From Macrostomum lignano (lineage: Eukaryota), in NCBI GenBank assembly GCA_002269645.1, contig NIVC01001367.1, positions 124,001 to 188,000 on the forward strand: DNA of 64,000 nt. The letters are read 5' to 3'. Below, one piece after another: positions 42,803-63,972 of the stretch. The notes beneath the pieces are model-generated. The model had not been told where the DNA came from. It ran no database searches and saw only the letters and a list, made by a program, of their open reading frames with translations. A program made the translations under genes and the position numbers. Each line of letters starts with the position of its first letter. The first letter of the stretch is position 1.

Positions 42803-43081
42803 CTAGATAGATAGATAAACAAATAAATAGATAGATAGATAGATAGATATAGATAGATAGGTAGATAGGTAGGTAGCTAGATAGGTTAGATAGATAGATA
42901 GGTAGGTAGAAAGGTAGATAGATAGATAGGTAGCTAGATAGGTTAGATAGATAGATAGGTAGGTAGGTAGAAAGGTAGATAGATAGGTAGGTAGCTAGAT
43001 AGGTTAGATAGATAGATAGGTAGGTAGAAAGGTAGATAGATAGATATAGATAGATAGACGGATCGATGGAAAGATAGGTAA

Positions 43082-43117
<36 letters not shown>

Positions 43118-43223
43118 GTAGGTAGGTAGGTAGATAGATAGATAGATAGATAGATAGGTAGGTAGGTAGATAGATAGATAGATAGATATAGATAGATAGA
43201 CGGATCGATGGAAAGATAGGTAA

Positions 43224-43259
<36 letters not shown>

Positions 43260-43430
43260 GTAGGTAGGTAGGTAGATAGATAGATAGATAGATAGATAGG
43301 TAGGTAGGTAGATAGATAGATAGATAGAAAGATAGGTAGATAGATAGATAGATAGATAGATAGGTAGGTAGATAGATAGATAGATAGAAAGATAGGTAGA
43401 TAGATAAATGGAAAAAGATAGATAGATAGA
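42803..43430. repeat. (GATA)n/(GGTA)n microsatellite
   Basis: GATA runs with a duplicated interruption gacggatcgatggaaagataggtaaat. Confidence 0.96.
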
Positions 43431-43609: not shown

Positions 43610-44164
43610 ATTTCGGTAGAAGGATTCGGTAGATGAATTCAGTAGAAGGATTCGGTAGATGAATTCGGTAGAAGGATTCGGTAGAAGGATTCGGTAGATG
43701 GATTCGGTAGAAGGATTCGGTAGATGGATTCGGTAGAAGGATTCGGTAGATGAATTCAGTAGAAGGATTCGGTAGATGAATTCGGTAGAAGGATTCGGTA
43801 GAAGGATTCGGTAGATGGATTCGGTAGAAGGATTCGGTAGAAGGATTCGGTAGTAGGATTCGGTAGAAGGATTCGGTAGATGGATTCGGTAGAAGGATTC
43901 GGTAGATGAATTCAGTAGATGGATTCGGTAGATGAATTCAGTAGATGGATTCGGTAGATGGATTCGGTGGATGGATTCGGTAGATGGATTCGGTAGATGG
44001 ATTCGGTAGAAGGATTCGGTAGATGGATTCGGTAGAAGGATTCGGTAGAAGGATTCGGTAGTAGGATTCGGTAGAAGGATTCGGTAGATGGATTCGGTAG
44101 AAGGATTCGGTAGATGGATTCGGTAGATGGATTCGGCAGAAGGATTCGGTAGATGGATTCGGTG
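43610..44164. repeat. 13-bp minisatellite
   Basis: Unit ga(a/t)ggattcggta. Confidence 0.95.
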
Positions 44165-49451: not shown

Positions 49452-49960
49452 TATCCGAACACACCGCAGGCACTCAGATATCCGGACACAGCGCAGGCAC
49501 TCAGATATCCGGACACAGCGCAGGCACTCAGATATCCGGACACAGCGCAGGCACTCAGATATCCGGACACAGCGCAGGCACTCACATATCCGGACACAGC
49601 GCAGGCACTCACATATCCGGACACAGCGCAGGCACTCAGATATCCGGACACAGCGCAGGCACTCACATATCCGGACACACCGCAGGCACTCAGATATCCG
49701 GACACACCGCAGGCACTCAGATATCCGGTCACACCGCAGTCCGCAGGCACTCAGATATCCGGTCACACCGCAGTCCGCAGGCACTCAGATATCCGGTCAC
49801 ACCGCAGTCCGCAGGCACTCAGATATCCGGTCACACCGCAGTCCGCAGGCACTCAGATATCCGGTCACACCGCAGTCCGCAGGCACTCAGATATCCGGAC
49901 ACACGCAGTCCGCAGGCACTCAGATATCCGGACACACGCAGTCCGCAGGCACTCAGATGC
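49452..49960. repeat. 27-bp minisatellite grading into a longer variant unit
   Basis: cgcaggcactcagatatccggacacag, then ...ccggtcacaccgcagtccgcaggcac. Confidence 0.93.
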
Positions 49961-53069: not shown

Positions 53070-53565
53070 AGTCAGTCATGCAGCAGTTCCTCTATTCTCA
53101 CCTGGTGCCCCTCACACTGTCAGTCATGCAGCAGTTCCTCTATTCTCACCTGGTGCCCCTCACACTGTCAGTCATGCAGCAGTTCCTCTATTCTCACCTG
53201 GTGCCCCTCACACTGTCAGTCATGCAGCAGTTCCTCTATTCTCACCTGGTGCCCCTCACACTGTCAGTCAGTCATGCAGCAGTTCCTCTATTCTCACCTG
53301 GTGCCGCTCACACTGTCAGTCATGCAGCAGTTCCTCTATTCTCACCTGGTGCCGCTCACACTGTCAGTCATGCAGCAGTTCCTCTATTCTCACCTGGTGC
53401 CCCTCACACTGTCAGTCATGCAGCAGTTCCTCTATTCTCACCTGGTGCCCCTCACACTGTCAGTCATGCAGCAGTTCCTCTATTCTCACCTGGTGCCCCT
53501 CACACTGTCAGTCATGCAGCAGTTCCTCTATTCTCACCTGGTGCCGCTCACACAGTCAGTCATGC
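53070..53565. repeat. 48-bp minisatellite, about 10 copies
   Basis: Unit gtcagtcatgcagcagttcctctattctcacctggtgcccctcacact. Confidence 0.95.
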
Positions 53566-53820
53566 AACACTTCATGACTCATTGGTAAGAAAATAAGCAA
53601 ACGATAAAGCCGCACATAGGATAGATTTTTGCTAATGCAGTAGTGGATGAATATTAGATTAAGTAGAAGTGAGTCTGCAATAAAGGATGAACAGGCTTAT
53701 ACAATGTAGATGAGGATGCGGAAGATTAAGACAGTAAGCGACAGCGGTATATACCGCTTGTACAGCATAAAGTGTGCAATAAAACAAAAACTGGATTGAA
53801 CACAATGCAAAAAGCTGGAG

Positions 53821-53968: not shown

Positions 53969-54242
53969 AACAAAGACTTGGATTCCTATATACTAAAAAA
54001 TTTTTATTCTAAAAATCGTTTTCAAACATTCGTAAAAATCGAAAAAGCTGCAACCCAGAATTTGGAACCAAAGAACACATTGAGCAAGATGGGAGCAGAG
54101 CTCACTAATACGAATCGTATGTAAATCAAGAAAAAAACGATTGCAGAGCGCACAGATAAAAACATTCACGTTGGCTGAAGGAACAAAAAAACAAGGATAC
54201 AAATGTTACAGATGTTAAACCGTGGTGTGCGGGGGTAGCAAA

Positions 54243-55410
54243 GATTTACCGATCAGATCTGCTGAACTCAGCTCAGGCCATGGCAGTGATTTACCGATCA
54301 GATCTGCTGAACTCAGCTCAGGCCATGGCGGTGATTTACCGATCAGATCTGCTGAACTCAGCTCAGGCCATGGCAGTGATTTACCGATCAGATCTGCTGA
54401 ACTCAGCTCAGGCCATGGCGGTGATTTACCGATCAGATCTGCTGAACTCAGCCCAGGCCATGGCGGTGATTTACCGATCAGATCTGCTGAACTCAGCTCA
54501 GGCCATGGCAGTGATTTACCGATCAGATCTGCTGAACTCAGCCCAGGCCATGGCAGTGATTTACCGATCAGATCTGCTGAACTCAGCTCAGGCCATGGCG
54601 GTGATTTACCGATCAGATCTGCTGAACTCAGCTCAGGCCATGGCAGTGATTTACCGATCAGATCTGCTGAACTCAGCTCAGGCCATGGCGGTGATTTACC
54701 GATCAGATCTGCTGAACTCAGCCCAGGCCATGGCGGTGATTTACCGATCAGATCTGCTGAACTCAGCTCAGGCCATGGCAGTGATTTACCGATCAGATCT
54801 GCTGAACTCAGCTCAGGCCATGGCAGTGATTTACCGATCAGATCTGCTGAACTCAGCTCAGGCCATGGCGGTGATTTACCGATCAGATCTGCTGAACTCA
54901 GCCCAGGCCATGGCGGTGATTTACCGATCAGATCTGCTGAACTCAGCTCAGGCCATGGCAGTGATTTACCGATCAGATCTGCTGAACTCAGCCCAGGCCA
55001 TGGCAGTGATTTACCGATCAGATCTGCTGAACTCAGCTCAGGCCATGGCGGTGATTTACCGATCAGATCTGCTGAACTCAGCTCAGGCCATGGCAGTGAT
55101 TTACCGATCAGATCTGCTGAACTCAGCTCAGGCCATGGCGGTGATTTACCGATCAGATCTGCTGAACTCAGCCCAGGCCATGGCGGTGATTTACCGATCA
55201 GATCTGCTGAACTCAGCTCAGGCCATGGCAGTGATTTACCGATCAGATCTGCTGAACTCAGCTCAGGCCATGGCAGTGATTTACCGATCAGATCTGCTGA
55301 ACTCAGCTCAGGCCATGGCGGTGATTTACCGATCAGATCTGCTGAACTCAGCCCAGGCCATGGCGGTGATTTACCGATCAGATCTGCTGAACTCAGCTTA
55401 GGCCATGGTG
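54243..55410. repeat. 45-bp minisatellite, 26 copies, with a 10-unit higher-order repeat and a downstream inverted copy
   Basis: Unit gatttaccgatcagatctgctgaactcagc(t/c)caggccatggc(a/g)gt; the inverted arm is at 55495-55521. Confidence 0.97.
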
Positions 55411-55645
55411 ATTATTTACCTAGGGTCGCTATAAACAAATTTTATAAAATCCAGCATGGAAATGAGTTCTTAAATCTAGCAAAATTGCATCTGCAGCTGA
55501 GTTCAGCAGATCAGATTGGTAGGGACTAGCAATATTGTTGCTAATGCAAATAGCCATACATAAGGACACAAATAGCATTGAAACAAAGAAACAATTTTAA
55601 CTGATTGAACGCGCAAAAAGAGTTTGCCATCCAGTAGGACAGATT

Positions 55646-58600
55646 TCACTGCGGAGGAAAGACAGGACTTTCCGGCTCGGCCATGGGGTCCGGATGACCG
55701 TAAGCGGCGACCCGGGGAACAAAATCGAACTGCTCGTCATAGTCCATCTGGCCATGCAGCAGCAGATCGGGTTCAGCCTCTTGGGCTAACATATCCGGCC
55801 GGTCATTTCGCAAAGGCTGCAGCATCGAAGGCTGAAATTCGGCTTCATTCAGTTGTGGTCCCAACTCGGTCAGGTCAACTTCGGCAGCGAAGTCCGGGAC
55901 GTCTAGGCCGAATCGGCAGTAGAGTTCCATGAGAAACTCGTCACAGTCACCAGGAAAACTGCCCATGGCTTCTGCCTCGCTGCGAATTTCAGCAGCTCGA
56001 GCTAAAACCACTTCCTCAGTAACTCCACTGCCAAAGAGAGATACGTTATCGAATTCAGCATTGTGCAGTCCGGGAAGTTCCATGACAGCTTTCAAATAGT
56101 TGTATGCGTTGGAGAGTTGCGACTGATTGCGGGAAGCTAATCCACTTTTGATCATCCGTTTGGTCATCTTGGCACCAGGACAAAAGATTATAGCTTTAGT
56201 TTCATAGCCAGGACCGCAAAGTTCTACACGGTTTCTTCGGGTGCCGTAGGACAAGTTGCAAAAATCGATAATTATGTTGGATCTCATCTTAGTAGCGTGT
56301 GTTAGACACGTGTGAATGAGATCATTTCCGGCGATCTGTAAATAGTCGAATAATCGATTCAACGTCTCCTCGTTAGACAATGATTCGTCAAGTTCCGGGG
56401 CAATGAGCCTTTCGAAAAATAGGTCCAAACTCACAACCATGAGCTGCGAGTCTTTATGGACAGATTTCTGCGCTTCGGTAAAGCGAGTTTTGCCTGATAA
56501 TGGCAGTCCTACATTAAAAAGCACTTCTGGCTGCTCAGGAGGTTTGAATTGAGCAATTGGCACAGCTGTATTGAAAGCCAATGACAAGTTGTCTGACGGA
56601 CGAACTAACGTTGATGAAATTTTGTTGAAGCACAGTTGGAGCTTGGAGTTTACAACAGCAACATGCGGAACCCAGACCATATCTATGATGTTCGCTGGGA
56701 GCTGATATCGGATACTAAATGGACATGACTGTCGCGCTAAGTGCCGGCCAGAAGGAGAGGAGGCAACAGCGACATTAAAAATGGCAAGCGCTTCGTTGCA
56801 GTCAGTTTTTTTAATCTCAATAGTAATCGCAACTCGATCACCAACTGCGCATTCAAGACCAGGTAGTCGAGAAAGCGAACCAGCGAGAATAGCGTAGCCT
56901 TTGGAGGAATAAGCAAAGCTGAATTTACTTGATCCTGGAAGTCCGTGATTGGCCGCACAGAAATTAGATCTCGGTACTAGACTCCACCCAACACGAAAAG
57001 CACTTCTTTGAGAAGGTTGCTCTTTCGCGTGAAGCAGGACAGTCTCAAAATAAATTTTTCCTTCAGAGACGCCATGACTAGCAAATGATGTCCCCCAAAG
57101 CTCACAGACCGAGTTTCCGGGGGCAGGAAGTTCGTCTAGACTGTTAATGACACCACAGGGCACGTCTTCTGTTTGCAAAAAAGGATCATCTAAAATCAAG
57201 CTAACGGATAACCTTGATTCCGAAAAACTCTGGTCTTCAGACGAGTTGTTTAGTGCCTGATTTTCGAGGTCAGTTGACGCTGCTCTAACTGTAGTTTCAG
57301 ACGGCTCTGAGCTTGAATTCTTAGACATGGATCTGTCCATATAGTTTGCATACATTGGACGACTGCTAGAAGCGCTATCTGCAACAAGCTTGCTTTGGCG
57401 AAATCTAGAGGTCCTGGCGGCCTTCATAGAAGCGCAAGCAATGATTTCCTGAAGGTTAGAGATCGGCTGCATTTTCACTTCAACAATATCAGACACTTTG
57501 CTGCTTTTATTTAAAGCCACAAAGCGCGAGTATTGACGCAGTGCCAATTCTAAGTCAATGTTCGAATCCAACGATGCAACCAAAAATTCTGGCAGATCGG
57601 CTTTTATGGCTAACTTTCGAATGCATACAATCCGTTCTAATTCCGCAAATATCTCCGACGGAAATGCAGCACCAGCTTGCTGACACAAGAGCTTAAAACG
57701 CTGAGAAATAATAGAAAATGATTCGACTAGTTCTTTCTGCAATCGATGATGCTGAAGATGACCCATGTACTTCTTAGCACAGAGTTTAGCTACAATGGTT
57801 AACAACTTCTTGACTTCAGGCATTGAAATTTTGCTTTGTTGCACTGCGGAGTCAATGGCTAGCTTTAGCTCACTGTCCATTTTTGATTGGTCAATGCTGT
57901 TCTTTAAATGATTAAATTGTAATTGAGCACAAAAGGCGGAACAAATCGGGATAGTTGAGTCAGGAAAACCATTGACAGTTACATTAAATGGCTTGAAGCT
58001 TACTCGATCAGAGCGCAAGGCTAAAAGTTTAATAATATTACAAGCTTCACGAACTTCGATTAGCTTTTCTTTTGGAAAACCAAACTTCTGACCAATCAAA
58101 CGCAGCGCAATTCTATCGATCATTGGCGCAACAGAGCCATGCGGAAATTCAATCTGCAGCTCACAGCAGAAATTTCGCATTTTCTGCACAACTTGGAGTG
58201 GTTGGATTTGTAGCCTGCCGTCGTCATTAAAGTCAACTGATTTTTCTCGCAAAAACTCATTGAAATAAATATCTACAGCACCTGAGAGAACATGGCTCGG
58301 AAACTCAGTTAATGACCCAATGTCCTCAGCGCGAGGATTCTCAATGTTGACTTTATAAAGTCTTGATAAACAACTCTCCAGGTCACAGGCTTTAATGCCG
58401 CCATGCAATAACGTTTTAATTTTATTAATTGTCCATTGGCAGCTTATAAATGGTCGAAAGGCTGCAAAAATCGAGTGAGAATCAAGAACAAGCCTTTGAG
58501 CTTGGACAATAACCTCTAGGATTCTCATTTCAGTTCGAGGATATTCGACGCCAAAGGCGCTGCAAATGAATTTAATTCTTTGCACCAAATTATCAGTTGA

Positions 58601-61534
58601 ATTTAAACGTTTTAAACTTCGCATGGGATGAGTAATCCAACGAATATGCCTGCAAATGGCGACTGAAAGCGATCGAGTAAATACATCAGCTGGAACTGAC
58701 CTTTTAATCTCTAACAGAGAGCTGTTCAACCTGTCGCGCAAACTGCCGAGAAAGGAATCGTGCACATAGAGAAAAAAGTACTGCCGGTTTTCACGCAACA
58801 CACTAGCGATACTTGATATAAGAGATTCCGGTAACCGATGTTCAGAATAAATAGATGGCGGAATTCGTTCGATTTGGTTGAGGCAGGCAAGGAAGTCCAT
58901 TTTTTTACCAAGCAATGAGAATAGCTGCCACAAAGTTGTGGTAACTTGATCCAACTCTTCGGGAATAGAAAGCCTAAAGCACGCACGCTTAACAAATGCC
59001 AATTCAACAATTCGATCGACAAGATCACGCGGCATGTACTTTAAAGAGAAGCATCGGTCCTTTAAGCACTCGAGGTCCAATTTTTCGATCTCAATTAGAC
59101 TGCTCTCAATTTTACAAAACATTTCTGCTCCGAACTGACTAAAGGCTGTCTCTAAAATATCTGTCGAATCATTTGAACTCAATTCAACCTTATCGAGACA
59201 ACTGAGCTCTATGCGCTGCATTACCTTCTGCTTATCGAATGAACGATTTTTTTCGGTCAAGGCACCAGCGTTAAGAAGCTCATTTAAAATACAAAGGATT
59301 TCTTTAGTAGCTCGCTGCTTCACAGCATCATCCGGTTGTCTCATTGTCTTATGTGGTCTGGAAGGGCCTGCTTCAGACCCCGTTGGCCTGTTGATCGCCT
59401 CGGACTGTTGTTGATCTTTGGAGACACTCCTTTCTTCGCAAATTGGAGTGCTTTTGCCACTTGGCAGCGGAACACAATCGTTTTGGCAGTTAAAAGTTTT
59501 GTTAGATTGAATGTCGCGTTTCGATGTTGAATTTTCTCCTGACTTTTTTGGGATTTTCTTGCGAAACGGGTTCTCCCTAGGTTGGTAGTCACATTTTGAT
59601 TTCGTCAGCGTGTCAACAGGCTGAGGGCTGCCATCTCTGTTCGGAGCTTTGTTACATGGTGGTGCTGCGTCCTGGACAGGAAGATGTTGCGAATTGTCCT
59701 CTTCGGTGGGTTCTTCATCATTAGCAGGCTGGTGGTGAATAATAAGCTTGTCAGTTGGCTCACCAGTGTTTTCAGTGAGTTCAATAGCATCCGGCGCATT
59801 ATTCGAATCCTTAACAGAAATCAATGAAGATGAATTCCCAGCTGACTGGTGGCTGCCAGGTTTTGCTTTGGCTAACGAGTCAGTAGCCTGTGGACTTCTG
59901 TCGTTTCCCGGTTCCTCAAGCGACGCGATTTGGTTCTTTGAAGTTAGATCCTGCGAAGCTCGGTTGCTTGGCCTAATGTCAGTTGAATTTTCTGAAAGTA
60001 GATCATAGTCTATATCTTCTTGATCGGCATCATCGAGCGAGAAACAGAAAACGTTGTCTAATTCCGATTGTGCAGACTGCACATTCTCGTTGGGCAGTCG
60101 GCTATCAGATGGCTTGCTTCTCATATCGGAATCTTCTTCGAACGACTGATCTTCTGCGGGCAAATTGTCTTTCACAGACGTGCTTGGAGACTTAAAATTG
60201 CCCCGTTCATAATCTCGAATTTCATCCGACTTGCACTGATGGCTCTCTGTTGACTGATCGGTCATTCGCACGCCCTGCTTCATTGTCACATTGTTACTAG
60301 TTACCTTTCTGCTCTTGTCTGAGACGGCAGTCTGCTGTTCAACATAAAAATTCTCCGTGGAATTTTCACATTGCGGTTTGCTAGAAACAAATGGTTTTTC
60401 GGAGGTTTTGTCCTTCAGCAAATCAAGCGAGTCGTCTCTAGCCTGTTGATCCAGTTTAGGGTCTCGTAGCAAAACAATGATAGGACAACGGTTTGCCCCA
60501 AGTGCAGCGTTGGAATAATTGAGAGAAACCTTAGATGTTTCGTCACTTTCAGATTTTGATGCACCCGGCTTGTGTGTGTGACCGCTTTGAGTTTGCGTCA
60601 GGTAGTCGAGTCTCGGACTCTTACCAGGTTTCTTCGAAACACTTTTTGTATCAGTCGTAATCGAATGCATTTGACAATCCTTTCGCTTTGCTAGGGATCT
60701 CTCTGAACTGGATGAATGGGAAAGCTCAGATGGATTAGAAGAGTACTTCTTAATTATTTGAGATGTCCCAAGCTCAGAGAGAGGTACTTCTTTTCCAGGA
60801 GAGACGGCAGTCTCAGAAATAACACGTAAGTCTTCTGTCGTGCTCTGTTCTTCTGTTGCTGTTTCATTTGCGCTGACTGGGGAACGGGGATCGCAGATGC
60901 TCAAATCATCAGTTTTAGATGCTAAATTCGATGCAGTATTTGCAGAATCCCCTTCTGGGCGCGACGAGTTCTGTTTAGTATGCTTTTCTGAGCTTTTCTT
61001 CGGCACAGTATGCTTCTCGAATAGCACACTGCTGCTGCTGGAACTCACACAAGCTGAGGTTACAGGTTGATTTGACTCGGTGGTCTCCAAGCCGCAGTTT
61101 AGCTGCTTTCGCTGTTTCTGCTCTGCTTGTGCGTCTCCTTGCTCAGAATCAGTGAAGGCCGCGACCACAGTGCCCAAGCTGACATTGCGCTTCTTCCGTT
61201 TCCTCTTTGATTCAAATGCCTGCTCAGCGTCTGTGGAGACTCCAGAGACTCCAGGCGCTTCTGTGGTCTCTGAGTCGCCACCTTGCTGCATTCGTTTCTT
61301 CTTTGTTCTTGCAGCTGTCTGTTCAGCATCCGCATAGCTTGTGACCTCGAGTGATCCAGACGAGACTTGCGAGCCTCTGCGCTTTTTGGTCTTTCGCCGC
61401 ATTTTAGCTGAATTTCCTTTGCCAACTTCAGCTCCGGACTGCGCCGCCTGTGCTGAAAGCGAGAGAGCGAGCTGGTCAAGCTGGGGATTTCTCACTATCA
61501 CCACAACTGCAATGCGACCGCTGCCCTGCGACAT
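55646..61534 (-). CDS. 1962-aa uninterrupted ORF: disordered NLS-bearing N-terminus, unknown helical middle, C-terminal SPRY plus P-loop NTPase (AAA_33) of divergent hnRNP U/hnRNPUL type
   Basis: The ORF is stop-free for 5.9 kb. The SPRY-like region at about 57210-56620 reads LWGTSFASHGVSEGKIYFE...FRVGWS...FSFAYSSKG...WVPHVAVVN...LCF. The NTPase has Walker A GLPLSGKT (56509-56486), Walker B-like NIIIDFCN, KAIIFCP and MELPG...EFDNV, in the same order as hnRNP U. No SAP domain or RGG box was seen. Confidence 0.8.
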   Translation of the reverse strand: MSQGSGRIAVVVIVRNPQLDQLALSLSAQAAQSGAEVGKGNSAKMRRKTKKRRGSQVSSGSLEVTSYADAEQTAARTKKKRMQQGGDSETTEAPGVSGVSTDAEQAFESKRKRKKRNVSLGTVVAAFTDSEQGDAQAEQKQRKQLNCGLETTESNQPVTSACVSSSSSSVLFEKHTVPKKSSEKHTKQNSSRPEGDSANTASNLASKTDDLSICDPRSPVSANETATEEQSTTEDLRVISETAVSPGKEVPLSELGTSQIIKKYSSNPSELSHSSSSERSLAKRKDCQMHSITTDTKSVSKKPGKSPRLDYLTQTQSGHTHKPGASKSESDETSKVSLNYSNAALGANRCPIIVLLRDPKLDQQARDDSLDLLKDKTSEKPFVSSKPQCENSTENFYVEQQTAVSDKSRKVTSNNVTMKQGVRMTDQSTESHQCKSDEIRDYERGNFKSPSTSVKDNLPAEDQSFEEDSDMRSKPSDSRLPNENVQSAQSELDNVFCFSLDDADQEDIDYDLLSENSTDIRPSNRASQDLTSKNQIASLEEPGNDRSPQATDSLAKAKPGSHQSAGNSSSLISVKDSNNAPDAIELTENTGEPTDKLIIHHQPANDEEPTEEDNSQHLPVQDAAPPCNKAPNRDGSPQPVDTLTKSKCDYQPRENPFRKKIPKKSGENSTSKRDIQSNKTFNCQNDCVPLPSGKSTPICEERSVSKDQQQSEAINRPTGSEAGPSRPHKTMRQPDDAVKQRATKEILCILNELLNAGALTEKNRSFDKQKVMQRIELSCLDKVELSSNDSTDILETAFSQFGAEMFCKIESSLIEIEKLDLECLKDRCFSLKYMPRDLVDRIVELAFVKRACFRLSIPEELDQVTTTLWQLFSLLGKKMDFLACLNQIERIPPSIYSEHRLPESLISSIASVLRENRQYFFLYVHDSFLGSLRDRLNSSLLEIKRSVPADVFTRSLSVAICRHIRWITHPMRSLKRLNSTDNLVQRIKFICSAFGVEYPRTEMRILEVIVQAQRLVLDSHSIFAAFRPFISCQWTINKIKTLLHGGIKACDLESCLSRLYKVNIENPRAEDIGSLTEFPSHVLSGAVDIYFNEFLREKSVDFNDDGRLQIQPLQVVQKMRNFCCELQIEFPHGSVAPMIDRIALRLIGQKFGFPKEKLIEVREACNIIKLLALRSDRVSFKPFNVTVNGFPDSTIPICSAFCAQLQFNHLKNSIDQSKMDSELKLAIDSAVQQSKISMPEVKKLLTIVAKLCAKKYMGHLQHHRLQKELVESFSIISQRFKLLCQQAGAAFPSEIFAELERIVCIRKLAIKADLPEFLVASLDSNIDLELALRQYSRFVALNKSSKVSDIVEVKMQPISNLQEIIACASMKAARTSRFRQSKLVADSASSSRPMYANYMDRSMSKNSSSEPSETTVRAASTDLENQALNNSSEDQSFSESRLSVSLILDDPFLQTEDVPCGVINSLDELPAPGNSVCELWGTSFASHGVSEGKIYFETVLLHAKEQPSQRSAFRVGWSLVPRSNFCAANHGLPGSSKFSFAYSSKGYAILAGSLSRLPGLECAVGDRVAITIEIKKTDCNEALAIFNVAVASSPSGRHLARQSCPFSIRYQLPANIIDMVWVPHVAVVNSKLQLCFNKISSTLVRPSDNLSLAFNTAVPIAQFKPPEQPEVLFNVGLPLSGKTRFTEAQKSVHKDSQLMVVSLDLFFERLIAPELDESLSNEETLNRLFDYLQIAGNDLIHTCLTHATKMRSNIIIDFCNLSYGTRRNRVELCGPGYETKAIIFCPGAKMTKRMIKSGLASRNQSQLSNAYNYLKAVMELPGLHNAEFDNVSLFGSGVTEEVVLARAAEIRSEAEAMGSFPGDCDEFLMELYCRFGLDVPDFAAEVDLTELGPQLNEAEFQPSMLQPLRNDRPDMLAQEAEPDLLLHGQMDYDEQFDFVPRVAAYGHPDPMAEPESPVFPPQ

Positions 61535-62490: not shown

Positions 62491-63972
62491 TCAGTCTGCA
62501 TCCTTGTCTTCGAGCTGCACCAGGAACAACTTCTGCACCAAGCGGGTGAAGCTGGAGCTGGCCTTCAACAGCGAGGTTGGTTTCCTTTGCCAAGCAACGC
62601 CGACCAGGTAGACCGGGATGCCGGTCAGGATAATAAGGATGCCCATGACGCTCTCCTGGAAGGCGCCAATGAAGGTGTTGGTGCACAGCAGCACGGTGAG
62701 CAGGGTGTACACCACTGGGAACACGATGGGCACCCGAATCGGCCGGGGCGCGAGCGGTCGCGTGATGCGGAAGTACAGCACGATGAAGACAGACAGGCCG
62801 ATGGCCAGCCAGTTGACGAAGCCCATGTAGTTCATCAGCATGTAGATGTCATCGGCCACCAAGTAGACGAGCGACAGCAGGCCAACAAGCAGCACAGCTG
62901 GCAGCGGTGTCAGCAGCTTGCGCTGGATCATGCAGAGCACGGCTGGCATGTGGCCCTCTTCAGCGGCGGTGTAGAACAGCCTGGACGTGGTGAGCATGAT
63001 GCCGTTGACGCCACCGAAGGTGGACAAAGACACGAAGACGGGCATCACCATGGCCAGCGGGCCGAACAGCTTCTGTGCAAACAGAATGGCAACAGCTGGA
63101 GTGGAGACGAAGATGCTGACTGGCACGGTGGTGAAGTAGGCGGCGTTGGCCAGGACGTAGACCACGGTGACCAGCGCGCAGGAGATGAAGATGGCCAGAG
63201 GCAGGTCCCGCTGCGGATTCTTCATCTCGCCAGTGACGCAGTTCAAGTAGTTCCAGCCATTATAAGCGAACAGGCCGGAGTAGAAGGCCCGCACAAGATT
63301 GCCGATGCCGAGCGTGGTGTCAGCGAAGGCATCATTGAAGGCCTCAACGCGACCGCGGCAAACCTGGGCAACGCCGGCAGCGATGATACCCAGCAGGGCG
63401 ATGGTCTTGCCCCAGGTGCAGACGTCCTGGATAATGGTGGACGCGCGGACGCTGCAGCAGTTGGCGAAGGTGATGATGGTGATGCAGAGGGCAGCCAGCA
63501 GCTTCTCAGTAATGATGGGCGCCTGGCAACCTGTGAAAATTGGCTCCAGGACGTACTTGGCGAATGTGAGTGCCACAATGGTCTGGCCGCAGGGCCGCAT
63601 GACGATGATCTCGCACCAGACGCGCAGGAAGCCGAGGAACGGGCCGAACGCGTCCAGAACATAGGCGTAGTCAGCGCCCGACCGCTGAATCATCGTGCCC
63701 AGCTCCGCGTAGCTGTACGCCCCAAAGAAGCTGAACACGCCGCAAGCGACCCACACTAGCAGGGAGGCGCCTACGCTGTTTACCTCCTTGAAAATGCCAG
63801 TCGGGCTAACAAAGATCCCGGACCCGATGATGGAGCCGACAATGATGCTGACCCCATTGATGAGGGTGATGCGCCGCTTCAGCTGCACCGGGTCCTCTGA
63901 AGAGGCGAGCTCCTCTCCCGAAGCCGCCGCCTTTTTACCAAGGCTCTCCGTTGACTCGCAGGCCTTCGGCAT
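62491..63972 (-). CDS. SLC7A5-like: L-type/y+L amino-acid transporter light chain (SLC7 LAT family)
   Basis: Single 493-aa ORF. Motifs: IIVGSIIGSGIFVSP, LSYAELG-like YSYAELGT, extracellular Cys in IFTGCQAP (the position of the heavy-chain disulfide), FAYNGWNYLN, STFGGVNG, SRLFYTAAEEGHMP. Acceptor ctctgtag lies immediately before the ATG. The exact orthologue cannot be assigned. Confidence 0.93.
   Translation of the reverse strand: MPKACESTESLGKKAAASGEELASSEDPVQLKRRITLINGVSIIVGSIIGSGIFVSPTGIFKEVNSVGASLLVWVACGVFSFFGAYSYAELGTMIQRSGADYAYVLDAFGPFLGFLRVWCEIIVMRPCGQTIVALTFAKYVLEPIFTGCQAPIITEKLLAALCITIITFANCCSVRASTIIQDVCTWGKTIALLGIIAAGVAQVCRGRVEAFNDAFADTTLGIGNLVRAFYSGLFAYNGWNYLNCVTGEMKNPQRDLPLAIFISCALVTVVYVLANAAYFTTVPVSIFVSTPAVAILFAQKLFGPLAMVMPVFVSLSTFGGVNGIMLTTSRLFYTAAEEGHMPAVLCMIQRKLLTPLPAVLLVGLLSLVYLVADDIYMLMNYMGFVNWLAIGLSVFIVLYFRITRPLAPRPIRVPIVFPVVYTLLTVLLCTNTFIGAFQESVMGILIILTGIPVYLVGVAWQRKPTSLLKASSSFTRLVQKLFLVQLEDKDAD

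What the first reader, a model, noticed from the sequence alone, without database searches (positions are those of the whole stretch)
55646..61534. Giant intronless hnRNP U-like protein lacking SAP and RGG, with codon usage unlike its neighbours
Seen: 1962 aa in one ORF with many A/T-ending codons, in contrast to the GC3-rich flanking genes. It has about 740 aa of S/E/D/K-rich disorder with basic NLS clusters (RRKTKKRR, KRKRKKR), an unknown middle region, then SPRY and an NTPase with intact GxxxxGKT and hhhhD motifs, and an acidic tail. Known: hnRNP U/UL1/UL2 are SAP-SPRY-AAA-RGG proteins of about 750-860 aa acting in chromatin-RNA scaffolding, DNA-break resection and snRNA/Pol II regulation. 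Inference: a fast-evolving retro- or lineage-specific paralog that replaced the nucleic-acid-binding ends with new modules, possibly germline-restricted.
Basis: partly seen in the sequence, partly recalled or inferred. Interest (0 to 1): 0.7.

Follow-up and report, generated by a model that had tools for sequence, protein, structure and literature searches.

The report
Giant flatworm hnRNP-U-like SPRY–kinase protein
This is a real, selectively maintained, intron-free gene of the flatworm Macrostomum lignano that attaches about 1,400 residues of new sequence to the SPRY-plus-kinase-like core found in hnRNP U proteins; it is a lineage-specific variant of a known protein type.

Summary
Window 55646..61534 (-) is one 1962-codon ORF, expected by chance at about 3e-50. 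Its GC3 is 0.43, against 0.82-0.90 in six neighbouring genes. The window is Macrostomum lignano contig NIVC01001367.1.

The layout is:
- N-terminal disordered region of about 760 aa, with three basic clusters
- orphan, leucine-rich ordered region, aa ~761-1380
- Ser-rich linker
- divergent SPRY domain, aa ~1441-1660
- PNK-like P-loop domain, aa ~1661-1880
- acidic tail

Pfam alone does not find SPRY, and AAA_33 scores below its cut-off. An exhaustive HMMER search, a paralogue-only profile, and an AlphaFold model (pLDDT 79.6) searched with Foldseek all recover SPRY plus a PNK-like kinase fold, homologous to hnRNP U/UL1/UL2. SAP and RGG are absent.

The nearest relatives are two intron-containing M. 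lignano paralogues. The three genes form one clade (NJ bootstrap 100).

Between two homeologous copies the ordered part gives omega ~0.09 and the disordered N-terminus ~0.87.

Walker A, Walker B and the Asp equivalent to the PNKP catalytic residue (Asn in human hnRNPUL1) are all present, so it may be an active kinase.

Retrogene origin and germline restriction remain untested.

Verdict: new variant of a known kind, moderate interest.

The parts
55646..61534 (-). Complete single-exon CDS, 1962 aa plus stop
   Evidence: ORF list. Identical to L003 12439..18327, and intact in homeolog L002 with 46 substitutions and no indel. In L002 it is annotated as a single-range 1979-aa 5'-partial CDS, PAA93786.1.
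59255..61534 (-). N-terminal low-complexity, probably disordered region (aa 1-760)
   Evidence: S15 K8 D7 E7 T7 %, GRAVY -1.07, 19% hydrophobic residues. No Pfam hit at E<=10. Omega ~0.87 against L002. An in-frame 99-nt deletion occurs here in L001.
61376..61399 (-). Basic cluster RRKTKKRR (aa 46-53), NLS-like
   Evidence: Regex and translation. Nuclear import is inferred, not tested.
61187..61207 (-). Basic cluster KRKRKKR (aa 110-116), NLS-like
   Evidence: It lies in a short repeated [ST]DAEQ...K/R-cluster unit read from the translation.
57395..59254 (-). Orphan ordered region (aa 761-1380), Leu-rich, no detectable homologue
   Evidence: About 39% hydrophobic residues. No Pfam or PDB hit. 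The exhaustive HMMER search found only self for this stretch. Omega ~0.17 for aa 761-1420. One internal pair of about 50 aa aligns with z 4.8.
57215..57394 (-). Ser-rich linker (aa 1381-1440)
   Evidence: Hydrophobic fraction drops to 18% in this block.
57470..57472 (-). Met1355, start of the 608-aa and 624-aa public gene models
   Evidence: P0026 and P0001 align from aa 1355. AATAAA and an ...AAAAGCAG acceptor-like site lie just upstream. A short isoform is possible but untested.
56555..57214 (-). Divergent SPRY domain (aa ~1441-1660)
   Evidence: Weak ASH2L SPRY hit, E 0.5. Macrostomum-only profile hits ASH2L/Bre2 SPRY at E 0.003. Family profile hits DDX1 SPRY at 5e-38. The AF2 model gives Foldseek matches to DDX1 and ASH2L SPRY at E 2e-11. 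W, HG, G, FRVGW and PHV motifs are conserved.
55895..56554 (-). PNK-like P-loop kinase domain (aa ~1661-1880), the AAA_33 / 'dPNK' equivalent
   Evidence: AAA_33 24.3 bits, E 4e-5, below the 27-bit cut-off. Kinase-only profile hits PSTK at 2e-7, bacterial Pnkp1 at 6e-6, and T4 PNK and PNKP. Foldseek matches the PNKP kinase domain and other P-loop kinases at about 1e-5. pLDDT is about 87-95.
56486..56509 (-). Walker A GLPLSGKT (aa 1676-1683)
   Evidence: G, K and T/S are invariant in all 23 aligned homologues.
56423..56425 (-). Asp1704, the column of the PNK catalytic Asp (PNKP D396, hnRNPUL1 N456)
   Evidence: It lies 22 residues after the Walker A Lys, as N456 does after K434 in hnRNPUL1 (PMC13066744). 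The column aligns with the 'NRD' Asp of bacterial Pnkp1. It is Asp in all three Macrostomum paralogues.
56264..56266 (-). Walker B Asp1757 in NIIIDFCN
   Evidence: Invariant Asp in all 23 aligned homologues. Equivalent to hnRNPUL1 D505.
55649..55894 (-). Acidic Pro/Asp/Glu-rich C-terminal tail (aa 1881-1962)
   Evidence: Net charge -15, P15 D11 E11 %. Low pLDDT in the modelled part, aa ~1883-1900.

Best explanation
The ORF is a genuine, transcribed, selectively maintained nuclear gene of Macrostomum lignano. It encodes a lineage-specific member of the SPRY + PNK-like ('hnRNP U-like core') protein family. Its C-terminal ~460 aa form the same juxtaposed SPRY/P-loop kinase-fold unit as in hnRNP U/UL1/UL2, with an intact nucleotide-binding site.

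In place of SAP and RGG it carries about 760 aa of disordered sequence with NLS-like basic clusters, an orphan ordered region of about 620 aa, and an acidic tail.

Most likely mechanism (inferred): the protein enters the nucleus through the basic clusters. ATP binding to the kinase-fold domain then controls how the SPRY-kinase core and the flanking disordered or helical regions engage RNA 5' ends and partner proteins. This is what has been shown for human hnRNPUL1 and hnRNP U.

Its low GC3 reflects a young, weakly codon-selected, lineage-specific gene sitting at the genomic background composition. It does not point to foreign origin.
For: Shown:
- One 1962-codon ORF, intact with no indel in a second homeologous copy.
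- Omega ~0.09 over aa 761-1962 (3 non-synonymous vs 10 synonymous changes, p<0.001), against ~0.87 in aa 1-760.
- Public, RNA-seq-derived gene models cover it.
- Homology to SAP-SPRY-AAA_33 proteins named hnRNP U/UL1/UL2, spanning both domains.
- SPRY and PNK-like folds in an AF2 model with pLDDT 79.6 and pTM 0.79.
- Independent paralogue-only profile hits to ASH2L/Bre2 SPRY.
- Walker A, the catalytic-column Asp, Walker B and an Arg cluster are conserved.
- A clade with two intron-containing M. lignano paralogues of intermediate GC3 0.58-0.60.
- Conserved synteny with the SLC7 gene in three homeologous loci, and no transposon or viral domain.
- M. lignano genome GC is 45.9% against CDS GC 58.7% (PMC6739440), so GC3 0.43 is the background value.

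From the literature: the hnRNPUL1 SPRY-dPNK core binds NTPs and RNA 5' ends and regulates interactions made by its disordered regions (PMC13066744).
Against: - No direct evidence of localisation, ATP binding or RNA binding.
- Pfam does not call SPRY, and AAA_33 is below its cut-off.
- The AF2 model depends on an alignment dominated by hnRNP U-like sequences, so the fold match is not fully independent of the sequence homology.
- Without SAP and RGG, the nucleic-acid-binding ends of true hnRNP U proteins are missing, so a chromatin or RNA role may not carry over.
- Two of the three public gene models cover only the last ~608-624 aa.
- The third homeolog (L001) is frameshifted.
Confidence: 0.6

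Rival explanations
1. It is a catalytically active polynucleotide 5'-kinase acting in RNA or DNA end processing, not a 'dead' nucleotide-binding scaffold. The N-terminal ~1400 aa would serve to target the enzyme.
For: Asp1704 occupies the column of the PNK catalytic Asp, which is Asn in human hnRNPUL1 and hnRNP U. A single N456D change reactivates hnRNPUL1 (PMC13066744). The column aligns with 'NRD' of bacterial Pnkp1. Walker A, Walker B and three of four basic residues after Walker B are present, and Asp is kept in all three Macrostomum paralogues. The kinase domain alone retrieves stand-alone and HD-fused PNK-like kinases about as well as it retrieves hnRNP U proteins.
Against: hnRNP U N512D was not reactivated, and hnRNPUL2 (Glu at this position) is inactive, so the acidic residue alone is not sufficient. 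Asp is the commonest state in the sampled family (14 of 23), so it does not mark a special subgroup. The T507-equivalent position is Cys, and one Arg of the RNA-binding patch is Asn. No assay has been done.
Confidence: 0.25
2. The gene arose by retrotransposition of a spliced mRNA from an intron-containing SPRY-PNK parent. This would explain both the missing introns and the atypical codon usage.
For: There is no intron in 5.9 kb, while the M. lignano average is 4.9 introns per gene. The two closest paralogues each have at least two introns, one of them inside the SPRY region. The gene sits on a different contig from the paralogue cluster.
Against: The nearest paralogue is only 34% identical over the core and shares nothing detectable outside it, so no parent can be named. 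No poly(A) tract is visible after the stop, and target-site duplications were not searched for. The adjacent SLC7 gene is also a single ORF, so intron-free coding sequences are not rare here. Low GC3 is equally explained by weak selection or low expression.
Confidence: 0.2
3. The long ORF mainly yields a short product. An internal trans-splice or promoter site gives a ~608-aa SPRY-PNK protein starting at Met1355, and the upstream 1354 codons are a separate or rarely translated unit.
For: The public gene models for the window copy and the L001 copy start exactly at Met1355. AATAAA and an AG acceptor-like site lie within 40 nt upstream. M. lignano transcription units are often cut by trans-splicing. 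The frameshifted L001 copy still keeps the C-terminal 696-codon ORF open.
Against: The upstream 1354 codons stay open and in frame with the C-terminal part in two homeologs, and have no stop of their own. aa 761-1420 show purifying selection (omega ~0.17, p 0.015). The L002 model spans the whole ORF. A short isoform would add to the full-length product rather than replace it.
Confidence: 0.2
4. It is foreign or selfish DNA: a transposon, a viral insertion or a horizontal transfer, betrayed by its deviant codon usage.
For: GC3 is 0.43 against 0.82-0.90 in the neighbours, there are no introns, and satellite arrays flank the gene.
Against: The gene keeps the same position next to the SLC7 gene in three homeologous contigs. 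No transposase, reverse transcriptase or integrase domain is present. The nearest relatives are intron-containing M. lignano genes, followed by animal and plant hnRNP U-like proteins. The viral structure library gives only generic single-domain matches. No prokaryotic relative was found. The composition equals the host's non-coding background.
Confidence: 0.03

Closest known systems
hnRNP U-like proteins 1 and 2 (HNRNPUL1/HNRNPUL2) and hnRNP U / SAF-A
   Same: The same juxtaposed SPRY + PNK-like P-loop core. The alignment runs across both domains (E 5e-8 to 6e-4, 19-22% identity to the query in alignment A1). Walker A and Walker B are conserved, the core is flanked by disordered regions, and nuclear-type basic clusters are present.
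   Different: It has no SAP domain and no RGG/RG region. It is 1962 aa against about 560-1030 aa for the hnRNP U-like hits found here. About 620 aa of orphan ordered sequence and about 760 aa of disordered sequence precede the core, and the tail is acidic instead of basic. The SPRY domain carries an insertion and the kinase domain a C-terminal helical extension, both shared only with the Macrostomum paralogues. Asp replaces Asn at the catalytic column. The gene is intronless with low GC3.
M. lignano paralogues Mlig023272 (PAA90456.1, 1401 aa) and Mlig031917 (PAA90455.1 / PAA80896.1)
   Same: The closest relatives: 34% and 26% identity over the core, at 180 and 86 bits, forming a clade with bootstrap 100. 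Both lack SAP and have Pfam AAA_33 only. Both share the SPRY insertion, the 'FGLD'-type helix after the kinase domain, and Asp at the catalytic column.
   Different: They have introns and GC3 0.58-0.60, and lie in tandem next to an ankyrin + Mab-21_C gene. Their N- and C-terminal regions show no detectable similarity to those of the query. Mlig023272 has a Q/K-rich disordered region and an R/S/H/P-rich C-terminal tail.
Polynucleotide kinases of the PNK family (mammalian PNKP kinase domain, T4 Pnk, bacterial Pnkp1) and PSTK
   Same: The same P-loop kinase fold (Foldseek ~1e-5; profile E 2e-7 to 0.03). Walker A, catalytic-column Asp and Walker B sit at matching positions.
   Different: There is no phosphatase or ligase partner domain, and the kinase fold is fused to SPRY. 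Activity is unknown, and the substrate-binding residues are only partly conserved.
SPRY domains of DDX1 and ASH2L
   Same: The best structural matches for aa ~1441-1660 (Foldseek E 2e-11 to 5e-10, TM to target 0.7-0.75). The motif pattern W..(A/S)HG..G.(Y/C)FE...FR.GW is shared.
   Different: Sequence identity is only 16-19%. The Macrostomum SPRY has an extra beta-hairpin-sized insertion and is not detected by the Pfam SPRY model.

Membership tests
hnRNP U family (hnRNP U / UL1 / UL2) | N-terminal SAP DNA-binding domain | tested here: not met
   No Pfam SAP hit at E<=10 in aa 1-762 or anywhere else. A SAP HMM built from four family members gives a negative score with all filters off.
hnRNP U family (hnRNP U / UL1 / UL2) | SPRY domain immediately N-terminal to the NTPase | tested here: met
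   Not called by Pfam. Recovered by homology to SPRY-containing hnRNP U-like proteins, by a paralogue-only profile against ASH2L/Bre2 at E 0.003, and by the AF2 model searched with Foldseek (DDX1/ASH2L SPRY, E 2e-11).
hnRNP U family (hnRNP U / UL1 / UL2) | PNK-like P-loop domain (Pfam AAA_33) with Walker A and Walker B | tested here: met
   AAA_33 24.3 bits, below the 27-bit cut-off. GLPLSGKT and IIID are invariant columns. Profile and fold matches to PSTK, Pnkp1 and PNKP.
hnRNP U family (hnRNP U / UL1 / UL2) | SPRY and kinase-fold domains packed into one globular unit | tested here: inconclusive
   pTM 0.79 for the two-domain model suggests a fixed arrangement. Coordinates and PAE were not available for inspection, and the alignment used was dominated by hnRNP U-like sequences.
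hnRNP U family (hnRNP U / UL1 / UL2) | C-terminal RGG/RG RNA-binding region | tested here: not met
   No RGG tripeptide and only two RG dipeptides, at aa 53 and 444. The C-terminal 82 aa have net charge -15.
hnRNP U family (hnRNP U / UL1 / UL2) | Orthology to one of the U / UL1 / UL2 lineages | tested here: inconclusive
   In the NJ tree the Macrostomum clade is a long branch outside all sampled U/UL1/UL2, plant and unnamed members. Sampling is small, only a distance method was used, and no other flatworm sequence was available.
Active PNK-family polynucleotide 5'-kinases | Catalytic Asp after beta-2 (PNKP D396, T4 Pnk D35) | tested here: met
   D1704 lies 22 residues after the Walker A Lys, in the same column as hnRNPUL1 N456 and the Pnkp1 'NRD' Asp.
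Active PNK-family polynucleotide 5'-kinases | Phosphotransfer to 5'-OH nucleic acid | not testable with these tools
   This needs a biochemical assay. The literature shows that the acidic residue alone does not guarantee activity.
Zeta-toxin family (Pfam PF06414) | Score above the Pfam gathering threshold | tested here: not met
   18.6-21.4 bits against a cut-off of 22.3, covering only profile positions 10-101 of 199. The match reflects the shared P-loop kinase fold.
Retrogene | Intronless copy of an identifiable intron-containing parent, with poly(A) remnant or target-site duplication | tested here: inconclusive
   The intronless criterion is met, and the paralogues have introns. The closest paralogue is only 34% identical, and no poly(A) tract follows the stop. 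Target-site duplications were not searched for.

The most novel reading that the evidence does not exclude
The Macrostomum SPRY-PNK clade, this giant protein included, may be made of live polynucleotide kinases. That would mean the hnRNP U-like core is enzymatically active in some animals. Here the activity would be coupled to a new ordered module of about 620 aa and a long disordered arm, possibly in a lineage-specific RNA-end surveillance or defence role. Two hints point that way: the paralogues sit next to an ankyrin/Mab-21 (cGAS-like) gene, and a CARD-SPRY-AAA_33 protein exists in an unidentified organism.
Probability: 0.15. Interest if true: 0.6.

Novelty: new variant of a known kind. Interest (0 to 1): 0.35.

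Why it matters
The SPRY + kinase-fold core of hnRNP U proteins was recently shown to be a 'dead' polynucleotide kinase in humans, reactivated in hnRNPUL1 by one Asn-to-Asp change. This flatworm protein and its two paralogues naturally carry Asp at that position and lack the SAP and RGG ends. They offer a natural test of two questions: whether the core can be enzymatically active, and what the core does when separated from its usual DNA- and RNA-binding modules. M. lignano supports transgenesis (PMC5730564, PMC7053086), so the question can be tested there. The gene is also a clear example of a young, lineage-specific gene whose GC3 sits at the genomic background while conserved neighbours are strongly GC3-biased. 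Beyond that it is a lineage-specific domain-architecture variant, not a new kind of system.

Tried and rejected
- Word-indexed protein search with the full ORF, with the C-terminal 562 aa, and with the three-paralogue profile. These returned nothing, only the gene itself, or the gene plus one paralogue.
- Exact look-up of the 1962-aa product: not on record. The locus was reached through the neighbouring SLC7 gene instead.
- Scan of bacterial and archaeal genomes: no relative, as expected for a eukaryotic gene.
- Bacterial promoter and terminator scan of the upstream region: nothing found, and not relevant to a eukaryote.
- Single-sequence AlphaFold of aa 1401-1962 failed (pLDDT 32). The run with an alignment succeeded.
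- Pfam and PDB sequence searches of aa 1-762 and 763-1400: no hits. A P2Y12 receptor match at E 0.45 is noise.
- Self-BLAST of aa 741-1962 found no repeats. Pairwise Smith-Waterman against shuffles found one significant pair only.
- A SAP-like reading of the recurring 'C..FG..YP' helix motif: rejected, because the SAP HMM scores are negative.
- BLAST and phmmer of the query's first 1440 aa against the non-core parts of the paralogues: nothing.
- Expression look-ups by gene identifier in full texts and in three papers' supplements: no occurrence.
- Viral structure library: only generic SPRY or P-loop kinase single-domain matches.
Full report
**1. What is there**

The window holds a single ATG-to-stop ORF of 1962 codons at 55646..61534 on the minus strand. 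With the local base composition, a stop-free run of that length has a probability of about 3e-50.

The neighbouring 493-aa amino-acid permease gene (62491..63972, minus; Pfam AA_permease_2, E 9e-56) is found exactly in assembly GCA_002269645.1, whose proteins the sources name Macrostomum lignano, on three contigs. One of them, NIVC01001367.1 (locus L003), carries an ORF identical to the window's. The window is therefore M. lignano DNA. Its other long ORFs are ordinary metazoan genes: RasGEF, COG4, an AAA ATPase, an ion channel, a TALPID3-like protein and a GH47 mannosidase.

**2. The observation**

Codon usage:
- GC3 of the ORF is 0.43, ranging 0.37-0.55 along its length. Six neighbouring genes have GC3 0.82-0.90.
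- The ORF's GC is 0.45, nearer to the flanking intergenic DNA (0.36-0.37) than to those genes.
- Published values for M. lignano are 45.9% GC for the genome and 58.7% for coding sequence, with conserved genes strongly GC3-biased (PMC6739440).
- So the ORF sits at the background composition rather than at a foreign one. A COG4-like exon ORF nearby also has GC3 0.47.

The regional description is correct:
- aa 1-760 are Ser/Lys/Asp/Glu/Thr-rich, with GRAVY -1.07 and 19% hydrophobic residues.
- aa 761-1380 are Leu-rich, with about 39% hydrophobic residues.
- A Ser-rich linker follows.
- The last 82 residues carry net charge -15.
- RRKTKKRR (aa 46), KKKR (aa 78), KRKRKKR (aa 110), GLPLSGKT (aa 1676-1683) and NIIID (D1757) are all present.

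**3. Is it a real gene?**

The three contigs carry homeologous copies in the same position next to the permease gene. M. lignano is described as a neopolyploid (PMC12896417).

L002 differs from the window copy by 46 substitutions and no indel over 5889 nt. Those substitutions divide sharply:
- aa 1-760: 24 non-synonymous and 8 synonymous changes, omega ~0.87.
- aa 761-1962: 3 non-synonymous and 10 synonymous changes, omega ~0.09, p<0.001.
- The orphan region aa 761-1420 taken alone: omega ~0.17, p 0.015.

The ordered part is therefore under purifying selection, and the disordered arm drifts almost neutrally while staying in frame.

The third copy (L001) has four lesions:
- an in-frame 99-nt deletion in the disordered arm;
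- a complex, locally duplicated indel that shifts the frame near aa 1273;
- a 1-nt deletion in a C run near the end.

It is either a decaying homeolog or carries assembly errors.

The genome annotation was built from RNA-seq (PMC5730564). It gives a single-range 1979-aa, 5'-partial CDS for L002 (PAA93786.1, Mlig013270g7). For the other two copies it gives only 608- and 624-aa models starting at Met1355. An AATAAA and an AG acceptor-like site lie just upstream of that Met, so a short SPRY-kinase isoform is possible. I could not test this.

**4. What the domains are**

Direct searches are weak:
- Pfam on the whole protein gives only a sub-threshold Zeta_toxin match.
- On the C-terminal 362 aa it gives AAA_33 at 24.3 bits (cut-off 27) and nothing for SPRY.
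- PDB sequence search gives a weak ASH2L SPRY match, E 0.5.

The exhaustive HMMER search of aa 763-1962 against 1.84 billion representatives found 24 proteins:
- the gene itself;
- M. lignano Mlig023272 (34% identity, aa 1422-1879);
- M. lignano Mlig031917;
- proteins at E 5e-8 to 6e-4 whose alignments span aa ~1477-1797.

Pfam shows the last group to be SAP-SPRY-AAA_33 or SPRY-AAA_33 proteins. Their sources name them hnRNP U, UL1 or UL2, from vertebrates, a mosquito and plants.

In an 11-sequence alignment (A1) two sets of motifs line up:
- SPRY hallmarks: W, HG, G, FR-x-GW and PHV.
- P-loop motifs: GLPxSGKT and IIDxxN.

Three further tests agree:
- A profile of the three Macrostomum sequences alone retrieves ASH2L and Bre2 SPRY domains at E 0.003-0.005.
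- AlphaFold2 with alignment A1 gives pLDDT 79.6 and pTM 0.79: a beta-sandwich followed by an alpha/beta domain.
- Foldseek matches the first half to DDX1 and ASH2L SPRY domains (E 2e-11). It matches the second half to the PNKP kinase domain, a fungal P-loop kinase, zeta/PezT-type kinases and APS kinase (about 1e-5 to 1e-4).

The fold result is not fully independent, because the alignment used was mostly hnRNP U-like sequences.

SAP is absent, and there is no RGG tripeptide. Nothing at all was found for aa 1-1420: no Pfam hit, no PDB hit, no representative other than self, and no similarity to the non-core parts of the paralogues. Within the orphan region, one pair of ~50-aa segments aligns better than all 200 shuffles (z 4.8).

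**5. Relatives and origin**

In a neighbour-joining tree of the core, the query, Mlig023272 and Mlig031917 form a clade with bootstrap 100. The query pairs with Mlig023272 at bootstrap 98. The clade sits on a long branch outside all other sampled members.

The three share features that the others lack:
- an insertion in the SPRY domain;
- a helical extension after the kinase domain ('...C.(K/R)(F/L)G(L/I)...').

The two paralogues lie in tandem on NIVC01000110.1, followed by an ankyrin + Mab-21_C gene. Each has at least two introns and GC3 0.58-0.60.

The query is thus the most derived member of a Macrostomum-specific expansion: intronless, with the lowest GC3 and the largest size. Retroposition is compatible with this but not demonstrated:
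- the closest paralogue is only 34% identical;
- no poly(A) remnant follows the stop;
- the adjacent permease gene is also a single ORF.

Foreign or selfish origin is disfavoured:
- synteny is conserved in three homeologous loci;
- no transposon domains are present;
- viral structure matches are only generic single-domain hits;
- there is no prokaryotic relative.

**6. How it probably works**

A 2026 study showed the following for human hnRNPUL1 (PMC13066744):
- Its SPRY and kinase-fold domains form one globular unit.
- That unit binds NTPs (Kd ~164 nM for ATP) and RNA 5' ends.
- The unit controls interactions made by the flanking disordered regions.
- The kinase is 'dead' because Asn456 replaces the catalytic Asp of PNKP (D396).
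- N456D restores 5'-kinase activity.
- The equivalent change in hnRNP U does not restore activity, and hnRNPUL2 (Glu at that position) is inactive.

In the flatworm protein the residue 22 positions after the Walker A Lys is Asp1704. That is the same spacing as K434 to N456. The column holds Glu in bird UL2 and Asn in the plant proteins, and it aligns with the 'NRD' Asp of bacterial Pnkp1. Walker B Asp1757 is present, and three of the four basic residues that follow are present. The T507-equivalent is Cys. Asp at this column is the commonest state among the 23 sampled homologues (14 of 23), so it is not special to this clade.

My best-supported reading is a nuclear protein that enters through its basic clusters. 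Its ATP-binding SPRY-kinase core then regulates, or anchors, interactions of the long disordered arm and the orphan ordered module with RNA ends and partner proteins. An active 5'-kinase is a serious rival (0.25).

What is shown: the domain identities, the motif conservation and the selective constraint. What is inferred: localisation, ligand binding and any catalytic activity.

**7. Comparison, novelty and verdict**

The protein works like, and is homologous to, the core of hnRNP U-like proteins. It fails two defining features of that family, SAP and RGG, and cannot be assigned to the U, UL1 or UL2 lineages. I therefore file it as a new architectural variant built on a known core, not as an hnRNP U orthologue.

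SAP-less SPRY-AAA_33 proteins are not unique to flatworms. Several unnamed representatives have only the two domains, and one from an unidentified organism has CARD_2-SPRY-AAA_33.

- Lineage-specific paralogue with replaced ends: yes.
- Retro origin: open.
- Fast evolution: only in the disordered arm.
- Germline restriction: untested.

Interest is moderate. The gene is annotated only as 'hypothetical protein'. Its value lies in offering a natural Asp-bearing, SAP- and RGG-free version of the SPRY-dPNK core in a flatworm with established transgenesis.

Noticed in passing
window 54243-55420: A 45-bp unit repeated 26 times at 97% identity lies directly 3' of the big ORF. It produces two spurious long repeat ORFs, 54222..55529 and 54280..55401 on the + strand.
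   Followed up: partly
window 42804-43430, 43612-44163, 49452-49958, 53071-53573: Several more satellite arrays lie between genes: (TAGA)n x158, a 13-bp unit x42, 27/34-bp units, and a 48-bp unit x10.
   Followed up: no
window 57470-57540 (minus strand): The public gene models for this copy and for the L001 copy start at Met1355. AATAAA and an ...AAAAGCAG acceptor-like site lie within about 40 nt upstream. This may be an internal poly(A) and trans-splice site giving a 608-aa SPRY-kinase-only isoform.
   Followed up: partly
L001 12456-18319 (NIVC01000694.1): The third homeologous copy has an in-frame 99-nt deletion, a complex locally duplicated indel that shifts the frame near aa 1273, and a 1-nt deletion in a C run near the stop. 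It is either a decaying homeolog or carries assembly errors. The intergenic DNA upstream of the ORF (between the SLC7 gene and the ORF) differs by 5.6-6% from the other copies, while the ORF differs by only about 1.5%.
   Followed up: partly
L004 3734-19887 (NIVC01000110.1): The two SPRY-kinase paralogues (Mlig031917, Mlig023272) sit in tandem, followed on the same strand by an ankyrin-repeat + Mab-21_C (cGAS-like) gene. Older gene models fuse them into 1915-2328-aa proteins.
   Followed up: partly
protein P0015 (Logan assembly, organism unknown): A 533-aa protein with a CARD_2 + SPRY + AAA_33 architecture. The hnRNP U-like core is here joined to a CARD domain, a domain type best known from death-fold signalling proteins.
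   Followed up: no
window ORF aa 8-21, 350-363 and 1442-1454 (about 61472-61513, 60446-60487, 57173-57211): A short hydrophobic motif recurs: IAVVVIVRNPQLDQ, CPIIVLLRDPKLDQ and LSVSLILDDPFLQ. The third copy lies just before the SPRY domain, and the first two are islands in the disordered arm. Their meaning is unknown.
   Followed up: no
window ORF aa ~966-1017 and ~1259-1310; also aa ~1865-1880: Two segments of the orphan region align (z 4.8, 0 of 200 shuffles) around QR(I/F)K..C...G..(Y/F)P. A similar '(F/L)G(L/I/F)' helix motif follows the kinase domain in all three paralogues and occurs near the N-terminus of Mlig023272.
   Followed up: partly
window 62491-63972 (minus): The SLC7-type amino-acid permease is encoded by a single uninterrupted ORF with GC3 0.83. 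It differs at only 2-3 of 1482 nt among the three homeologous copies.
   Followed up: partly
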